From Macrostomum lignano (taxonomy: Eukaryota), in the NCBI GenBank assembly GCA_002269645.1, contig NIVC01001530.1:1-64000 (forward strand): a DNA stretch of 64,000 nt, written 5' to 3'. Position numbers and translations under genes: made by a program. Of the stretch, positions 27,600-33,184 are shown piece after piece (the stretch's first letter is position 1; every line of letters starts with the position of its first letter). The notes under the pieces are model-generated. The model was given only the letters and a program-made list of their open reading frames with translations. It did not search any database and was not told the DNA's origin.

Positions 27600-30500
27600 A
27601 TGGCTACAAGCAGCGGAAGTAGTAAAGAGAAATCTACCGAATCAAATGAATTGACTTCGAATTTGACGCCAGCAGACGCGATTGCCACGTCGTCCGACTG
27701 GGAGATTGTCGACCCAGCTCAGCCGGCCGCATCTGCGAGTCAGCAACAGAATAACTATTCGACAAATAGTAGCAGCTCTTCTGTAGAAGTGCTTCGAGTG
27801 TCTGAAGCTGACGACACCTGTGAAGATAATGATGCCGACAATAACTTAGACGGCGGCGATCAAATCGACATTGGTGTCGAATTAAAAGAAGACGAACAGC
27901 AGCCGGTTTCTTCTATGCAAGCTTCATCCGAGACTGTTGCCGCGTCGGCAAACTTGGTTGTTGTTGGCAACGAGGTGCAGCAGCAGCAGCAGCAGCAACA
28001 ATTTTCCGGACAAGCAGAACAGCAACGCATTCTAAAAGCAATTCGTCTGCTGCAGAACTCTCTTCCGACATCGGCTGAGCAACAGCAGCAGCAGCAACCG
28101 CTGCAGTCGTCGCCACCGACGCCGCCGCCGGAGCCGGAACCCGCCCGACTTCGCATCATTCATCGCTGGCTGGACTACGACGAAGACGGCAACGAAGCCG
28201 AGCGCGAATCGCCGCCAGAAAGCGACATCGGATTGGCTGCCGAGCTGCCTAGCGCGGCGGCGGCTTCGGCGGCGGTTGTGGCTCCGCCTGACGGCGACGT
28301 CAACTCAGCCGACTATGGCCACGTGCTGCCAGCCATGCTGGCTGAGGCTGCCAGGCACAGGCAGCGGCAGTACCGGCACAGGCCGAATGAGCCGGTGAAT
28401 GGCTGGCTGAGCGTGCTTTGCCTGGTGGCGCTGGCCTTTGCTGTCGGACTCGGCCTGGGCCATTTCAATGGATTTTCAAGCGGACGGGATGGCCGACTGC
28501 TGATCGGCTGCCGGGCCTGGCGGGCTGACCAGGTGCGACTTTTTGGGGCAACTGACTGCGTGCCAGAATCCCAGATCCCCATTTGCTGGGCCAGCCTCCC
28601 AGATCCTCAGTTGCTGGGCCAGCCTCTCAGATCCTCAGTTGCTGGGCCAGCCTCTCAGATCCTCAGTTTCTCGGCCAGCCTCTCAGATCCTCAGTTTCTC
28701 GGCCAGCCTCCCAGATCCTCAGTTGTTCGGCTAGCCTCTCAGATCCTCAGTTGCTGGGCCATCCTCTCAGATCCTTAGTTGCTGGGCCAGCCTCCCAGAT
28801 CCTCATTTGCTGGGCCAGCCTCCCAGATCCTCAGTTGCTGGATTAGCCTTTCAGAGTGTCAGTTTCTGAGTCAGTATCCCAGATTCCCAGATTAAGCTAC
28901 AACTCTCAGTCTGGTAGACTGACCCCAGTATAGCCGCCATTATAAATCGATGCCAATAAATTTGGCTCAAATTTGCCAGGCCGCCCGTTCGCGCGCCCTC
29001 CGCCGCGACCTGGCCGCCTGCACTCGGCGCTACGACAATCTGGAGCTGTCAGTCAGCGAACTGAAAACCACCCTAGTTCAGAAGGAGTACGTGGACAAAT
29101 GGGAGAGCTTGTACGCTGAATCGGAGGAGGAGAAGGACGCCCTTCGTGTTGCTATGGAGCTGTACAAAACTCGGTACAACAGGGAGAAGGCTAGAAATGA
29201 AGAGCTTGGGGAGCGTCTTGCCGAAGCCGAGCGAGCTTGCAACTCAACTAAAGCGAATTTGCAGGTACACAATGTACTTTTCTGTCGGCGCTTAATTAGG
29301 AAATGTATGGTTGGTTGCTAGGGTAATCTAATTTAGTCATTGATTGCTAGGTAGAATCTAGTTTAGGCATTAGTTGCTAGGAGTAGTCTTATTTGATAGC
29401 TGGTTGCTAAGGAAAATTTCATTTAGGCATTGGTTTCTAGGAGTAGCCTTATTTGATAGCTGGTTGCTAAGGAAAATCTCATTTGGGCATTGGTTGCTAG
29501 GAGTAGTCTTATTTGATAGCTGGTTGCTAAGGAAAATTTCATTTGGGCATTGGTTGCTAGGAGTAGCCTTATTTGATAGCTGGTTGCTAAGGAAAATCTC
29601 ATTTGGGCATTGGTTGCTAGGAGTAGTCTTATTTGATAGCTGGTTGCTAAGGAAAATTTCATTTAGGCATTGGTTGCTAGGAGTAGCCTTATTTGATAGC
29701 TGGTTGCTAAGGAAAATCTCATTTGGGCATTGGTTGCTAGGAGTAATCTTATTTGTTGTTGGTTGCTAGGGGTAAATCTAATTTAGGCATTGGTTGCTTT
29801 GTAAAATCAAAGTTGAGTTCTAGTTGCTAAGGAAATCTATTTGTTATAAATAAAATCTATATATCCAATTTCAGTTGGACGAGCTAAAAGCCCGGAACGC
29901 AAAACTTCAAGTTGAAATCGAACAGTTTCGAACTTCTATACCGAAACACTCGAAAGATCTTTGCGGTAGGCTCGATCGTTTCCTATCCAATGAATATCCA
30001 GCTTGGTTTAGCGCCCTTAGCAACGGCACAGCAACAGCTGCTAAAGTTGGCGACGGCCTGCTTCGCGGCGTTAATAACGCTTCTGAACGGTTACTAAGGA
30101 AGCTGGGAAATTCGCCCGGAGGCGCATTGATGAAGAAGTTCACTAACGCTACGGTGAAATTGTTCAGAGAGCAGTTCGGCAGCCTAACAGGCCGGTTGCT
30201 AAGGAAGCTGCCGAAGCGCTATTTCGATTTTTCGACTGCCCCGTCGCCGCCGCCGGCCTATTCAACCGAGAATAATAACCAGAAACAGCCTGCCAATGAT
30301 GAAGCTAAGGAGATGAAGCTGGCCAAGGATTCCATTCCCACTGTTCCTATCGTTGTTGCTAAGAATGGCCAGTGCGTCCTTAGCAACGGCGTCAACGACG
30401 CCAACGACGATAGCGGCAAGGCGCGCGCCGCTCTGCGCTGGAGTCTGGACGGCCGGGCGGCGGCGCGAGCGCGCGAACGAAAATCTGACGCCAAAAAGAT

Positions 30501-33184
30501 GAAGCATCGTTCAAAGAAGCTGCGTCAGTTACGTCGGGGACAGAAAATTGCCGATAAGGATTGGTACGATCGCAGGCTGCAGGTGCGAACCATTTCCTGA
30601 TTTTGTTGTGCAGATTGACCCATTCTCTATGCAGATTGACCCATTATCTATGCATATTGACCCATTCTCTATGCAGATTGACCCATTCTCTATGTAGATT
30701 GACCCATTCTCTATGCAGATTGACCCATTCTCTATGCAGATTGACCCATTCTCTGTGCAGATTGACCCATTATCTATGCAGATTGACCCATTATCTATGC
30801 AGATTGACCCATTCTTTATATGCATATTGACCCATTATCTATGCAGATTGACCCATTCTCTATGCAGATTGACCCATTCTCTGTGCAGATTGACCCATTC
30901 TCTGTGCAGATTGACCCATTATCCATGCAGATTGACCCATTCTCTGTGCAGATTGACCCATTATCTATGCAGATTGACCCATTATCTATGCAGATTGACC
31001 CATTCTCTATGCAGATTGACCCATTCTTTATATGCATATTGACCCATTATCTATGCAGATTGACCCATTCTCTATGCAGATTGACCCATTCTCTATGTAG
31101 ATTGACCCATTCTCTATGCAGATTGACCCATTCTCTATGCAGATTGACCCATTCTTTATATGCATATTGACCCATCCTCTATGCAGATTGACCCATCCCC
31201 TATACAGATTGACCCATTCTCTGTGCAGATTGACCCATTCTCTGTGCAGATTGACCCATTCTCTGTGCAGATTGACCCATTCTCTATGCAGATTGACCCA
31301 TTCTCTATGCAGATTGACCCATTCTCTATGCAGATTGACCCATTCTCTGTGCAGATTGACCCATTCTCTATGCAGATTGACCCATTCTCTATACAGATTG
31401 ACCCATTCTCTGTGCAGATTGACCCATTCTCTGTGCAGATTGACCCATTCTCTGTGCAGATTGACCCATTCTCTGTGCAGATTGACCCATTCTCTGTGCA
31501 GATTGACCCATTCTCTGTGCAGAGTGACCCATTCTCTATGCAGATTGACCCATTCTCTGTGCAGATTGACCCATTCTCTGTGCAGATTGACCCATTCTCT
31601 ATGCAGATTGACCCGTTCTCTGTGCAGATTGACCCATTTTCTGTGCAGATCGACCCATTCTCTGTGCAGAGTGACCCATTCTCTATGCAGATTGACCCAT
31701 TCTCTATGCAGATTGACCCATTCTCTGTGCAGATTGACCCATTCTCTATGCAGATTGACCCGTTCTCTGTGCAGATTGACCCATTCTCTGTGCAGATTGA
31801 CCCATTCTCTGTGCAGATTGACCCATTCTCTATGCAGATTGACCCATTCTCTATGCAGATTGACCCATTCTCTATGCAGATTGACCCATTCTCTGTGCAG
31901 ATTGACCCATTCTCTATGCAGATTGACCCATTCTCTATACAGATTGACCCATTCTCTGTGCAGATTGACCCATTCTCTGTGCAGATTGACCCATTCTCTG
32001 TGCAGATTGACCCATTCTCTGTGCAGATTGACCCATTCTCTGTGCAGATTGACCCATTCTCTGTGCAGATTGACCCATTCTCTGTGCAGATTGACCCATT
32101 CTCTGTGCAGAGTGACCCATTCTCTATGCAGATTGACCCATTCTCTGTGCAGATTGACCCATTCTCTGTGCAGATTGACCCATTCTCTATGCAGATTGAC
32201 CCGTTCTCTGTGCAGATTGACCCATTTTCTGTGCAGATCGACCCATTCTCTGTGCAGAGTGACCCATTCTCTATGCCGATTGACCCATTCTCTGTGCAGA
32301 TTGACCCGTTCTCTGTGCAGATTGACCCATTCTCTGTGCAGATTGACCCACTCTCTGTGCAGATCGACCCATTCTCTGTGCAGAGTGACCCATTCTCTAT
32401 GCCGATTGACCCATTCTCTGTGCAGATTGACCCATTCTCTGTGCAGATTGACCCATTCTCTGTGCATATTGACCCACTCTCTGTGCATATTGACCCATTC
32501 TCTATGCAGATTGACCCATTCTTTATATGCATATTGACCCATTCTCTGTGCAGATTGACCCATTCTCTATGCAGATTGACCCATTCTCTGTGCAGATTGA
32601 CCCATTCTCTGTGCAGATTGACCCATTCTTTATATGCATATTGACCCATCCCCTATACAGATTGACTCCTCCCCTGTGTAGATTGACCTCCTATACAAAT
32701 TGACCCCTTCTCTATGCAAAGTGACCCCCTCTTCTATGTACATTGACCCCTCCCCTATTTTAACTGACCCTTATTGTTCCACTTCTTTTCTGTATACATA
32801 AATTTCTATATTGATGACCCTGTCTAGATCCACCCCTTTCATATCTAAACCGGCCCATCTATTGTACATATATAGGGTAAATTCAACCTTGTATACACAA
32901 TGCCCACCATCTCTACATAGCCAATTATCAATCGAACTAAAAACCAACAGGCCAGAGAAAAACTTCGCCAAAACGCACCAGCTGACCCCAATAGCGAGGT
33001 CATCTACGACTACGATGACGACGATGATGACATTGTCGATCGCAGGCTGGAAATGAAAGAGCGCACTGCCGATCTGCAATGGGGCGTCGATAGACTCAAA
33101 GCTGTGATGGACAAAGTGGCTACCAGGCTGGCCAGACTCAAAGAGAAATTTCGCGAAGCTAAAAAGAAAAGACAGTCAAATTGA
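27600..33184 (+). CDS. CCPG1/PBXIP1-like single-pass membrane protein (putative ER-phagy receptor), 4 exons, ~729 aa
   Basis: Exons 27600-28532, 28980-29264, 29875-30582, 32921-33184, all phase 0 and GT-AG, with an open joined frame ending REAKKKRQSN*. It has an acidic disordered N-terminus with LIR-like SSDWEIVD and FIR-like SSVEVL, a basic patch RHRQRQYRHR, TM WLSVLCLVALAFAVGLGLGHFNG (resembles recalled CCPG1 [19 protein letters not shown]), then a coiled coil. The exon 1 donor and exon 4 acceptor are the least certain junctions. Confidence 0.72.
28565..28850. repeat. Minisatellite, 30-bp unit (CCPG1-like intron 1); same family as HEATR5B intron 7
   Basis: Unit CCAGCCTC(C/T)CAGATCCTCAGTTGCTGGG(C). 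Confidence 0.92.
29330..29800. repeat. Minisatellite, 60-bp unit made of two 30-bp halves (CCPG1-like intron 2)
   Basis: Unit TGGTTGCTAGGAGTAGTCTTATTTGATAGCTGGTTGCTAAGGAAAATTTCATTTAGGCAT. Confidence 0.93.
30608..32760. repeat. Minisatellite, 21-bp unit, ~100 copies (CCPG1-like intron 3)
   Basis: Unit GCAGATTGACCCATTCTCT(A/G)T; a variant block recurs at offset 588 (28 units). Confidence 0.96.

What the first reader, a model, noticed from the sequence alone, without database searches (positions are those of the whole stretch)
27600..33184. Invertebrate CCPG1-like protein with LIR, FIR-like motif, TM and coiled coil: candidate ER-phagy receptor
Seen: SSDWEIVD (W-x-x-V with upstream Ser/Asp, W codon at 27699), SSSVEVL (27777-27794) and ESDIGL, a basic patch, a TM ending GLGHFNG (28404-28472), then a coiled-coil and basic C-terminal region, ~729 aa in total. 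Established (recalled): vertebrate CCPG1 (757 aa) has an N-terminal LIR (WTVI), FIP200-binding FIRs (SDIEML, SDIVTL) and a TM ending GFGHFYG, and has been described as vertebrate-specific. Inference: this dual ATG8/FIP200 receptor architecture predates vertebrates.
Basis: partly seen in the sequence, partly recalled or inferred. Interest (0 to 1): 0.7.

Follow-up and report, generated by a model that had tools for sequence, protein, structure and literature searches.

The report
Flatworm relative of ER-phagy receptor CCPG1
This Macrostomum lignano gene encodes a short, divergent member of a previously unnamed invertebrate protein family that is homologous to CCPG1, a receptor for selective autophagy of the endoplasmic reticulum that the literature calls vertebrate-specific, and it keeps the receptor's likely ATG8-docking motif, though no function has been tested.

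Summary
A four-exon gene on the + strand (27600-33184, GT-AG introns, all phase 0) encodes 719 aa, not ~729. The protein has a disordered acidic N-terminus with SSDWEIVD and SSVEVL, one transmembrane helix ending GLGHFNG, and a helical, basic C-terminal part. The organism is the flatworm Macrostomum lignano.

Compared directly with mammalian CCPG1, only the membrane segment matches. An exhaustive HMMER search and a metagenome scan found an unnamed invertebrate family that bridges the two. Its long members (about 1470 aa) start MSEQGSDSEAKDWTVVNKEG (human [21 protein letters not shown]). They also carry SDSDFVRLD aligned to CCPG1's FIP200-binding motif FIR2, the same membrane signature, and weak collinear matches to two lumenal cargo regions. 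hhalign gives 95.7% probability (E 9e-9). A family HMM scores the window protein at 52.7 bits.

The W-type ATG8-binding motif (LIR) and SS[LIV]EV[LI] recur in the same order in three relatives with complete N-termini. ESDIGL is a degenerate copy of the family's invariant DDRCESDISG and misses the published FIR consensus.

ER-phagy function is inferred only. I rate it a new member of a known kind, of moderate interest.

The parts
27600..28532 (+). Exon 1 (residues 1-311): start codon, disordered cytosolic N-terminal region, TM helix, first 20 lumenal residues
   Evidence: donor CAG|GTGCGA; in-frame stop 26 codons upstream with no other ATG between; AF2 pLDDT below 50 for most of 1-235
27690..27713 (+). 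SSDWEIVD: candidate ATG8-binding LIR (core W34-E-I-V37, 27699-27710), which also fits the FIR core
   Evidence: the only xLIR pattern in the protein. Counterparts are DWTVV (L007), SWAVV (L004), EWAVV (L032) and GWTVI (CCPG1), each near the N-terminus.
27777..27794 (+). SSVEVL (residues 60-65), preceded by SSS and followed by RVSEADDTCE: candidate phospho-dependent FIP200-interacting (FIR-type) motif
   Evidence: Fits psi-Theta-x-x-Gamma if S61 is phosphorylated. Counterparts are SSVEVI (L032), SSLEVI (L007) and SSIEVL (L004). The best local alignment to the CCPG1 N-terminus pairs it with FIR1 SDIE[ML]L...DSCE, but this is not significant (p 0.12).
28149..28169 (+). LRIIHRW: degenerate copy of the family motif SS.FRF[IV].P (CCPG1 SSSQYTFCQP)
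   Evidence: motif map; hhalign aligns FRFIHP with QYTFCQP. The assignment in the window protein rests on position and pattern only.
28218..28235 (+). ESDIGL: diverged copy of the invertebrate family's most conserved cytosolic motif DDRCESDISG[VI]
   Evidence: alignments. The family version fits the FIR core (D-I-S-G-V); the window version has Ala at the last position. It is absent from mammalian CCPG1, which has a basic patch there.
28371..28388 (+). YRHRPN juxtamembrane motif (family consensus Y[KR]H[RQ]PN)
   Evidence: R, Y, H and N are invariant in alignment A3; also seen
28404..28472 (+). Transmembrane helix ending in the signature AVGLGLGHFNG (CCPG1: [11 protein letters not shown])
   Evidence: hydropathy; AF2 helix 268-285; top BLASTP HSP with CCPG1; hhalign with shuffle control
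28980..29264 (+). Exon 2 (residues 312-406): conserved lumenal juxtamembrane coil with RRDLAAC (family DD[YL]LMC, CCPG1 KDYLSQC) and WESLYAESEEEK (29100-29135)
   Evidence: WESLY is the best match in CCPG1 275-560 to WERLYVEAK, inside CIR1, but it is not significant (E 0.076-0.35). AF2 helices 297-355 and 360-426 have pLDDT 66-86.
29875..30582 (+). Exon 3 (residues 407-642): helical lumenal region with N-x-S/T sequons, a Pro/Asn-rich disordered linker, and a basic helix ending in DWYDRRLQ
   Evidence: DWYDRRLQARE matches DWYLKRMMARE of L007 and KPWY.RR of L002/L004.
32951..33184 (+). Exon 4 (residues 643-719 plus stop): acidic run YDYDDDDDDIVD and a basic C-terminal helix
   Evidence: helix 668-718, pLDDT 63-89
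28533..28979 (+). Intron 1 (447 nt) with a 28-bp x10 minisatellite
29265..29874 (+). Intron 2 (610 nt) with a 60-bp x8 minisatellite
30583..32950 (+). Intron 3 (2368 nt) with a 21-bp x102 minisatellite

Best explanation
The gene encodes a shortened, fast-evolving flatworm member of an invertebrate protein family that is homologous, and probably co-orthologous, to vertebrate CCPG1.

Shown here: a single-pass membrane protein with a roughly 265-residue disordered acidic N-terminus, one TM helix carrying the CCPG1 signature G-x-G-H-F-x-G, and a helical C-terminal part.

Inferred by homology with CCPG1: the N-terminus faces the cytosol and the C-terminus the ER lumen (type II).

Inferred mechanism:
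- The N-terminal W34-E-I-V37 motif docks lipidated Atg8/GABARAP on the phagophore.
- Ser-rich hydrophobic motifs (SSVEVL, and perhaps the DWEIV motif itself) bind the claw domain of FIP200/Atg11-type scaffolds after phosphorylation.
- The lumenal coiled coil oligomerises and may hold lumenal cargo, so that ER fragments carrying the protein are delivered to lysosomes.
For: Gene model and identity with the NCBI model.

Single TM, disordered N-terminus and helical C-terminal part.

Family membership:
- phmmer hits P0127 (2.4e-7), P0128 (2.2e-5), P0129 (2.3e-4) and P0130-P0132 against 1.84 billion proteins.
- 52.7 bits (E 5e-14 at Z=20000) against an HMM built only from other family members.
- BLASTP against L007 gives E 4e-9 plus the collinear DWY.RR..ARE match.

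Family to CCPG1:
- hhalign 91.7%, 93.0% and 95.7% with E 8.8e-9 over 167 columns running from FIR2 through the TM to DYL..C.
- Further collinear hits at the N-terminus (E 6e-4), CIR2 (1.4e-3) and CIR1 (3.5e-3).
- BLASTP L007 vs CCPG1 gives E 3e-9 and 3e-4, all HSPs collinear.
- N-terminal Smith-Waterman alignment: z 6.4, 0 of 2000 shuffles.
- The family HMM hits mammalian CCPG1 at about 25.5 bits, E about 1e-5 at proteome scale.
- Shuffle control: 0 of 200 shuffles reach the observed score.

Motif order is conserved across L007, L004, L032 and the window protein: W-LIR, then SS[LIV]EV[LI], then FRF-like, then ESDI, then Y.H.PN, then the TM. The spacing from LIR to SSVEVL (28 residues) nearly equals that in L007 (29 residues).

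FIR core definition: PMC7946963. CCPG1 LIR and FIR function: PMC5791736.
Against: - Direct similarity of the window protein to CCPG1 is limited to about 22-60 residues around the TM.
- Its N-terminal similarity to CCPG1 or L007 is not significant on its own (p 0.12 and 0.09).
- A LIR-type pattern arises in 10% of shuffles.
- No Pfam family is on record for it, not even faintly, whereas CCPG1 carries PF27631 and PF27636.
- The FIR2 counterpart SDSDFV.L of the long family members is missing, and ESDIGL breaks the FIR core.
- CIR3 is not detectable in any invertebrate member. CIR1 and CIR2 are at noise level in the flatworm protein.
- Topology, ER localisation, ATG8 and FIP200 binding and ER-phagy are all untested. 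Presence of the binding partners in M. lignano was not checked here.
- The positive-inside rule is uninformative (+4 vs +3).
Confidence: 0.6

Rival explanations
1. It is a true CCPG1-family homologue, but the flatworm protein no longer acts, or never acted, as an autophagy receptor. It would be an ER or nuclear-envelope lumenal coiled-coil scaffold, and its LIR- and FIR-like strings would be ordinary features of an acidic, Ser-rich disordered region.
For: The motifs in the window protein are individually not significant. The protein has lost the FIR2-type SDSDFV.L motif and about half the length of the long forms. The cargo regions are not detectable. CCPG1 itself has also been reported as a scaffold for Rho GEFs (PMC5791736).
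Against: The W-x-[VI]-[VI] motif sits near the N-terminus in all three relatives with complete N-termini and in vertebrates. SS[LIV]EV[LI] is kept across at least four divergent lineages inside otherwise unalignable disorder. That pattern is typical of functional short linear motifs.
Confidence: 0.25
2. It is not homologous to CCPG1. It would be an unrelated single-pass coiled-coil protein whose TM happens to share a small-residue G-x-G-H-F-x-G packing motif.
For: Direct hhalign of the window protein against CCPG1 gives only 37.9%. TM segments are prone to spurious profile matches: one of 200 shuffles reached 86.9% probability. Exhaustive phmmer with the window protein did not retrieve CCPG1.
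Against: The family to which it belongs with database-wide significance matches CCPG1 at four collinear regions outside and inside the membrane. The observed TM-region score exceeds all 200 composition-preserving shuffles.
Confidence: 0.08
3. It is a membrane-tethered bZIP transcription factor of the CREB3/ATF6 kind, as the UniProt name 'BZIP domain-containing protein' for P0002 and P0003 suggests.
For: The automatic UniProt name. One lumenal coiled-coil exon of a relative has a 'faint' PF00170 hit.
Against: No Pfam bZIP hit is on record for any Macrostomum copy. The basic and coiled regions lie C-terminal to the TM, whereas CREB3/ATF6-type factors have the bZIP on the cytosolic N-terminal side (established knowledge). 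No PDB bZIP match at E up to 1.
Confidence: 0.02

Closest known systems
Vertebrate CCPG1 (cell cycle progression protein 1), ER-phagy receptor
   Same: Overall size (719 vs 757 aa). Long acidic, Ser-rich disordered N-terminus with a W-type LIR near the start, followed by an S-[SD]-[IV]-E-x-L motif. Single TM ending G-x-G-H-F-x-G. A D-x-L-x(1-2)-C juxtamembrane lumenal motif. Lumenal coiled coil with W-E-x-L-Y. Basic regions further on.
   Different: No FIR2-type motif. It carries the invertebrate-only ESDI motif and YRHRPN. It lacks the long region A coiled coil, CIR3 and the C-terminal FFG domain. No Pfam PF27631 or PF27636 hit. Direct sequence similarity is significant only at the TM.
Unnamed invertebrate CCPG1-like family found here (L007, L004/P0129, L002/P0130, L032, P0127, P0125 and about 25 metagenome exons)
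   Same: Y[KR]H[RQ]PN plus TM ..AVG[IL]G.GH[YF].G, then Q..+L+.L.DD.L.C and W.S.[YF]EE. The ESDI motif. The N-terminal W-LIR and SS[LIV]EV[LI]. The C-terminal DWY.RR..ARE.
   Different: The window protein and P0125 are half the length of the long forms (about 1470 aa). They lack the W[LC].CQ[VL].WW / RGCG..M.WQL cysteine-rich lumenal module and the SDSDFV.L motif, and DDRCESDISG is degenerate. The intron sits 20 codons after GH.xG rather than directly after it.
Yeast Atg39 (functional analogue)
   Same: Type II membrane protein with an N-terminal disordered region that binds Atg8 and Atg11 (the FIP200 counterpart) and a long lumenal domain (PMC9126229). This is the same working principle proposed here.
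   Different: No sequence relationship was tested or is claimed.
PBXIP1/HPIP (vertebrate paralogue of CCPG1; recalled from memory, not verified here)
   Same: The invertebrate family would be co-orthologous to both if they are whole-genome-duplication paralogues.
   Different: As I recall it, the PBXIP1 TM lacks the GHF signature. No PBXIP1 sequence was retrieved, so nothing was tested.

Membership tests
CCPG1 family | Single-pass type II architecture: long disordered cytosolic N-terminus, one TM, helical or coiled-coil lumenal C-terminus | tested here: met
   One hydrophobic window, 264-291. AF2 gives pLDDT below 50 for most of 1-235, a TM helix at 268-285, and long helices at 297-517, 586-650 and 668-718. 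Orientation is inferred from homology, not shown.
CCPG1 family | TM and juxtamembrane signature ...AL..A..[ML]G[FLI]GHF.G followed by D.L..C | tested here: met
   BLASTP top HSP. hhalign 91.7-93% with the family profile. 0 of 200 shuffles reach the score. The family HMM gives 25-26 bits on CCPG1.
CCPG1 family | Statistically supported homology beyond the TM | tested here: inconclusive
   Met for the long family members: four collinear regions and z 6.4 at the N-terminus. For the window protein itself the extra matches (SSVEVL/FIR1, WESLY/WERLY, region C) are collinear but not significant. Membership therefore rests on transitivity through.
CCPG1 family | Canonical N-terminal LIR (W-x-x-[ILV] with acidic or Ser context) that binds ATG8 proteins | tested here: met
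   The sequence motif SSDWEIVD is present and positionally conserved. Binding itself cannot be tested with these tools.
CCPG1 family | FIR motifs (psi-Theta-x-x-Gamma preceded by acidic or phospho-Ser residues) that bind the FIP200 claw | tested here: inconclusive
   SSVEVL fits only if S61 is phosphorylated. DWEIV fits. ESDIGL fails at Gamma (Ala). No counterpart of FIR2 is present. Consensus taken from PMC7946963; motif map.
CCPG1 family | Conserved lumenal cargo-interacting regions CIR1-3 (PMC10092646) | tested here: not met
   CIR1-like WESLY scores E 0.076-0.35 and the CIR2 region E 0.76. There is no CIR3 signal, even for the long forms.
CCPG1 family | Hit by the Pfam families carried by CCPG1 (PF27631, PF27636) | tested here: not met
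   The precomputed Pfam field is '-' for P0001-P0004 and for the gene on its NCBI contig, not even a faint hit. CCPG1 carries both families.
CCPG1 family | ER residence, UPR inducibility and ER-phagy activity | not testable with these tools
   These need localisation, expression and flux experiments.
Membrane-bound bZIP factors (CREB3/ATF6 type) | bZIP DNA-binding domain on the cytosolic side, N-terminal to the TM | tested here: not met
   No bZIP Pfam hit. No PDB bZIP match. The N-terminal region is predicted disordered, and the basic coils lie C-terminal to the TM.

The most novel reading that the evidence does not exclude
CCPG1-type receptors (N-terminal LIR, FIR-type motifs, the GHF transmembrane anchor, lumenal coiled coil) are not a vertebrate invention. 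They would date at least to the common ancestor of Spiralia and vertebrates. In this reading the invertebrate proteins use an extra, nearly invariant cytosolic motif, DDRCESDISG[VI], which fits the FIR core and has been replaced by a basic patch in vertebrates, as their main FIP200/Atg11 docking site. Flatworms would keep a minimal version of the receptor, which would define the core parts needed for function.
Probability: 0.3. Interest if true: 0.7.

Novelty: new member of a known kind. Interest (0 to 1): 0.55.

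Why it matters
Primary and review literature describe CCPG1 as vertebrate-specific (PMC5791736, PMC9126229). A PSI-BLAST search with its lumenal regions found no relatives (PMC10092646).

A bridging invertebrate family changes three things:
- It moves the origin of the dual ATG8/FIP200 membrane receptor design back by hundreds of millions of years.
- It shows which parts are ancient: the LIR, an FIR2-type motif, the GHF anchor and pieces of CIR1 and CIR2. It also shows which are vertebrate additions or losses: CIR3 and the ESDISG motif.
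- It offers regenerating, RNAi-tractable flatworms as a system for studying receptor-mediated ER-phagy.

The practical limits are two. The flatworm copy is the most derived member. I also could not check whether sequence databases already label some invertebrate proteins 'CCPG1-like'.

Tried and rejected
- **Word-indexed searches.** With the window protein, only M. lignano copies were found. With the family profile A3, only P0131 was returned. The CCPG1 search listed only mammals among its 906 hits, so I obtained no fish CCPG1, PBXIP1 or named invertebrate sequences.
- **PDB sequence search.** Nothing but a polyQ match.
- **C-terminal lumenal module.** hhalign of the L004/L002/P0127 C-terminal module against CCPG1 gave no signal. 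An FF..G.F..[DN]Q resemblance to the CCPG1 C-terminus that I saw by eye was not supported, and I dropped it.
- **Synteny with a RETREG/FAM134 gene.** One lies next to the relative P0125 in L003. The tblastx hits in the window at 46.5 and 49.6 kb fall in tandem repeats, so there is no such gene in the window.
- **Metagenome scan with A3.** It was repeated successfully with A4.
- **Literature searches for invertebrate CCPG1.** Only a retracted leafhopper paper that lists a 'putative' CCPG1 transcript. Other searches found no prior report.
- **AF2 on a single sequence.** Low confidence (mean pLDDT 52.8). I used it for secondary structure and disorder only and ran no fold search.
- **Taxonomy of the relatives.** The samples SRR26183964, SRR17902662, ERZ25767047, ERZ25070786 and the JGI Ga... 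contigs could not be assigned to taxa with these tools.

Full report
**1. What is in the window**

Reading 27400-33400 and splicing four + strand exons gives an uninterrupted 2160-nt CDS. The exons are 27600-28532, 28980-29264, 29875-30582 and 32951-33184. All introns are GT-AG and phase 0. The product is 719 aa. An in-frame stop lies 26 codons upstream of the ATG, with no other ATG between.

The word-indexed protein search found only Macrostomum lignano entries. The best is NCBI BOX15_Mlig000698g1 (P0001): 99% identical, with the same exon structure plus an 11-residue non-Met 5' extension. So the organism is this free-living flatworm. The window is collinear with contig NIVC01002790.1 at only 87-97% nucleotide identity, which makes it a second copy or haplotype.

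The intronless ORF P0125 from a related organism aligns across the first two exon junctions without indels. This supports the splicing.

The only numerical correction is 719 aa rather than ~729.

**2. Anatomy**

- There is one hydrophobic segment, residues 264-291, and it ends in AVGLGLGHFNG.
- A single-sequence AlphaFold2 model is of low confidence overall (mean pLDDT 52.8), but it is informative about order and disorder.
  - Most of 1-235 has pLDDT below 50.
  - A helix spans 268-285.
  - Long helices follow at 297-355 and 360-426 (pLDDT about 66-86), and more helices run to 517.
  - A disordered Pro/Asn-rich linker covers 518-585.
  - Basic helices lie at 586-650 and 668-718.
- The N-terminal part contains exactly one xLIR-type match, SDWEIV (W34). 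A pattern of that kind appears in 10% of shuffles of this region, so on its own it proves nothing.

**3. Direct comparison with CCPG1**

The recalled CCPG1 features are correct. The LIR is at 14-17. FIR1 was mutated at S22-D-I-E25, and FIR2 at S104, D105, I106 and L109. CCPG1 is a type II protein of 757 aa and is described as vertebrate-specific (PMC5791736; PMC9126229). Real mammalian sequences confirm WTVI, SDIEM[LV], SDIVTL and SMGFGHFYG.

- BLASTP of the flatworm protein against CCPG1 puts the TM first: LSVLCLVALAFAVGLGLGHFNG against [22 protein letters not shown], E 8e-4.
- Weak collinear HSPs follow: DKWESLYAESEEE against [13 protein letters not shown] (E 0.35), and a region C match (E 0.76).
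- hhalign of a 14-sequence mammalian profile against the single flatworm sequence reaches only 37.9% probability, over the TM alone.
- No Pfam family is on record for the flatworm protein, whereas CCPG1 carries PF27631 and PF27636.

Taken alone, the link would be suggestive but unproven.

**4. A bridging family**

An exhaustive phmmer search of 1.84 billion representatives returned only ten hits. Besides M. lignano copies, these were:

| Hit | Length | Identity / region | E-value |
|---|---|---|---|
| P0125 | 673 aa | 49% over 252-425 | 8e-38 |
| P0127 | 1021 aa | – | 2.4e-7 |
| P0128 | – | – | 2.2e-5 |
| P0129 | 1082 aa | – | 2.3e-4 |
| P0130-P0132 | three fragments | – | 3e-4 to 9e-4 |

All match the region around the TM, and none carries a name. 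They share one module:
- DDRCESDISG
- D.DLSS..G.LP..AG
- R.Y[KR]H[RQ]PN..LN
- a TM ending AVGIG.GH[YF].G
- then Q..+L+.L.DD.L.C and W.S.[YF]EE

A metagenome scan with two patterns from this module gave 28 more loci. Most are single exons that end directly after GH[YF].G.

One locus, L007, is a 5.2-kb intronless contig, presumably a transcript. It encodes a 1473-aa protein.

P0129 turned out to be the C-terminal part of a protein of about 1468 aa. Its N-terminal 385-aa ORF lies in the same frame on the same transcript contig (L004). The two ORFs are separated only by a TAA inside a 36-nt GT..AG segment, probably a retained mini-intron.

**5. The family is CCPG1-like along its whole length**

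L007 begins MSEQGSDSEAKDWTVVNKEGEVDGSEHAEGSDD...SSLE. Mammalian CCPG1 begins [37 protein letters not shown]...SSLE. A Smith-Waterman comparison of the first 50 residues scores 56 against a shuffle mean of 25.8 (z 6.4, 0 of 2000 shuffles). For L004 the result is z 2.6, p 0.02.

BLASTP of L007 against CCPG1 gives these matches:
- E 3e-9 for residues 274-463 against 97-270. This pairs FSDSDSDSDFVRLD with FGTASDDSDIVTLE (FIR2), SSS..FRFIHP with SSSSQYAFCQP, and the TM and DDYLMC with DYLSQC.
- E 3e-4 for 733-870 against 302-465. This ends in ERLTHRLIETQRQLAKEKDVSHLWQTLYVAEK against [28 protein letters not shown], inside CIR1.
- Further collinear weak HSPs at the N-terminus and in CIR2.

hhalign of L007 plus L004 against the mammalian profile gives 95.7% probability (E 8.8e-9, 167 columns). 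It also finds collinear secondary alignments at 1-33/1-37 (E 6e-4), 1006-1053/492-539 (E 1.4e-3) and 831-870/428-467 (E 3.5e-3).

Profiles that include the flatworm sequence give 91.7% and 93.0% for the TM plus juxtamembrane block.

As a control, I shuffled the CCPG1 alignment columns separately within the TM and within the adjacent lumenal stretch. The null score was 16.8 +/- 3.9 (maximum 43.5), against 52.3 observed; 0 of 200 shuffles reached it.

The cysteine-rich C-terminal module of the invertebrate long forms shows no relation to the CCPG1 C-terminus (CIR3).

**6. Membership of the window protein**

An HMM built only from non-Macrostomum family members gives these scores:
- the window protein: 52.7 bits (E 5e-14 at Z = 20000)
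- P0125: 68 bits
- P0127: 78 bits
- mammalian CCPG1: 25-26 bits (E about 1e-5 at proteome scale)

BLASTP against L007 gives E 4e-9 for the module. It also finds DWYDRRLQARE against DWYLKRMMARE near the C-terminus.

The flatworm protein and P0125 are therefore a short, derived branch. They lack the long central coiled coil, the Cys-rich lumenal module and the SDSDFV.L motif.

**7. Are the LIR and FIR-like motifs conserved?**

Three relatives with complete N-termini show the same order of short motifs inside otherwise unalignable disorder:
- L007: DWTVV (13), SSLEFVQL (38), SSLEVI (132), SDSDFVRLD (281), FRFIHP (326), CESDISGV (368), then the TM.
- L004: SWAVV (12), TEYVHL (37), SSIEVL (170), SDQSDFVKL (278), FRFVRP (330), CESDISGV (393), then the TM.
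- L032, genomic exons in order: MSDTDSSEGIGQEWAVV, SSSDFVHL, SSVEVI, SDSDFVRLD, then the module exon.

The window protein has DWEIV (34), SSVEVL (60), LRIIHRW (184), ESDIGL (207), YRHRPN (258) and then the TM. Its spacing from LIR to SSVEVL is 28 residues, close to the 29 from DWTVV to the F of SSLEFVQL in L007.

P0127 lacks the Trp. It has Y- and F-type motifs instead (EGYVEFAEL, DVDYIRIE).

The published FIR core is psi-Theta-x-x-Gamma. Psi is D, E or a phosphorylated S/T. Theta is I, L, V, F, Y or W. Gamma is L, I or V. Acidic or phospho-Ser residues precede the core (PMC7946963). Measured against it:
- DWEIV fits.
- SSVEVL fits if S61 is phosphorylated.
- The family's SDISG[VI] fits.
- The window's SDIGLA does not, because Gamma is Ala.

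The second (ESDIGL) is a real conserved element, but in this species it is a poor FIR.

**8. Mechanism: shown and inferred**

Shown:
- the gene structure
- the single-TM architecture
- family membership
- homology of the family with CCPG1
- positional conservation of the N-terminal short motifs

Inferred from homology with CCPG1, whose topology, ATG8 binding, FIP200 binding and ER-phagy role are experimental (PMC5791736, PMC7946963, PMC10092646):
- The N-terminus is cytosolic and the C-terminus lumenal.
- W34-x-x-V37 engages Atg8/GABARAP.
- Phospho-regulated Ser-hydrophobic motifs engage FIP200.
- The lumenal coil oligomerises and may bind cargo.

I put homology at about 0.85-0.9 and ER-phagy receptor function for this particular protein at about 0.5-0.6.

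Rivals:
- a family member without autophagy function (0.25)
- a convergent TM motif (0.08)
- a membrane-bound bZIP factor, as an automatic UniProt name suggests (0.02). There is no bZIP Pfam hit and the basic coils are on the wrong side of the membrane.

**9. Novelty**

I found no report of invertebrate CCPG1 in the searchable literature. The one exception is a retracted paper that lists a putative leafhopper transcript. All family members retrieved here are unnamed or mislabelled.

It is a new, distant member of a known kind, not a new kind of system. Its value is evolutionary and practical: it contradicts 'vertebrate-specific' and separates ancient parts of the receptor from derived ones.

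Three things I could not check:
- whether public databases already name some invertebrate proteins CCPG1-like
- which taxa the relatives come from
- how PBXIP1 fits in

Noticed in passing
window 25882-27507, 28572-28855, 29311-29798, 30609-32749, 33297-34198: Both flanks and every intron of the gene hold their own, mutually unrelated minisatellite: 54 bp x30.5 in the 5' flank, 28 bp x10 in intron 1, 60 bp x8 in intron 2, 21 bp x102 in intron 3, and 24/45 bp x40 in the 3' flank. They create many long spurious ORFs.
   Followed up: partly
window 17490-42624 vs L006 (NIVC01002790.1): The window is collinear with the NCBI M. lignano contig but only 87-97% identical at the DNA level, consistent with a duplicated or haplotypic copy. 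On that contig the upstream neighbour is a HEATR5/Laa1-like gene and the downstream neighbour a 454-aa gene with no Pfam hit.
   Followed up: partly
L003 5658-6035: On the contig of the closest relative (P0125), an ORF with a RETREG/FAM134 reticulon-homology domain (PF24456) lies 3 kb downstream of the CCPG1-like gene on the same strand. RETREG/FAM134 is another ER-phagy receptor family. No counterpart was found in the window; the weak tblastx hits at 46.5 and 49.6 kb are tandem repeats.
   Followed up: yes
L004 1234-1269: In the transcript contig of a long family member, the N-terminal 385-aa ORF and the P0129 ORF are in the same frame. They are separated by a single TAA inside a 36-nt GT...AG segment, probably a retained mini-intron.
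   Followed up: partly
P0004 (UniProt model of another M. lignano copy), aligned to window residues 33-48: In this copy or model the LIR stretch DWEIVDPAQPAASA reads TGRLSTQLSRPHLP. That is the +1 frame of the same DNA, flanked by identical sequence, so it reflects two compensating indels or an assembly or annotation error. The model is also fused to an upstream unrelated ORF.
   Followed up: no
L008-L033 (metagenome loci), e.g. L010 1182-1520: In about 25 genomic loci the exon that encodes DDRCESDISG...TM ends directly after GH[YF].G, so the intron position is conserved. In M. lignano the first intron lies 20 codons further downstream.
   Followed up: no
window 58001-60000 and 14001-16000: There are extreme strand composition skews: GC skew 0.99 at 58-60 kb with 30% GC, and -0.52 at 14-16 kb. 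These are presumably further simple or tandem repeats. I did not examine them.
   Followed up: no
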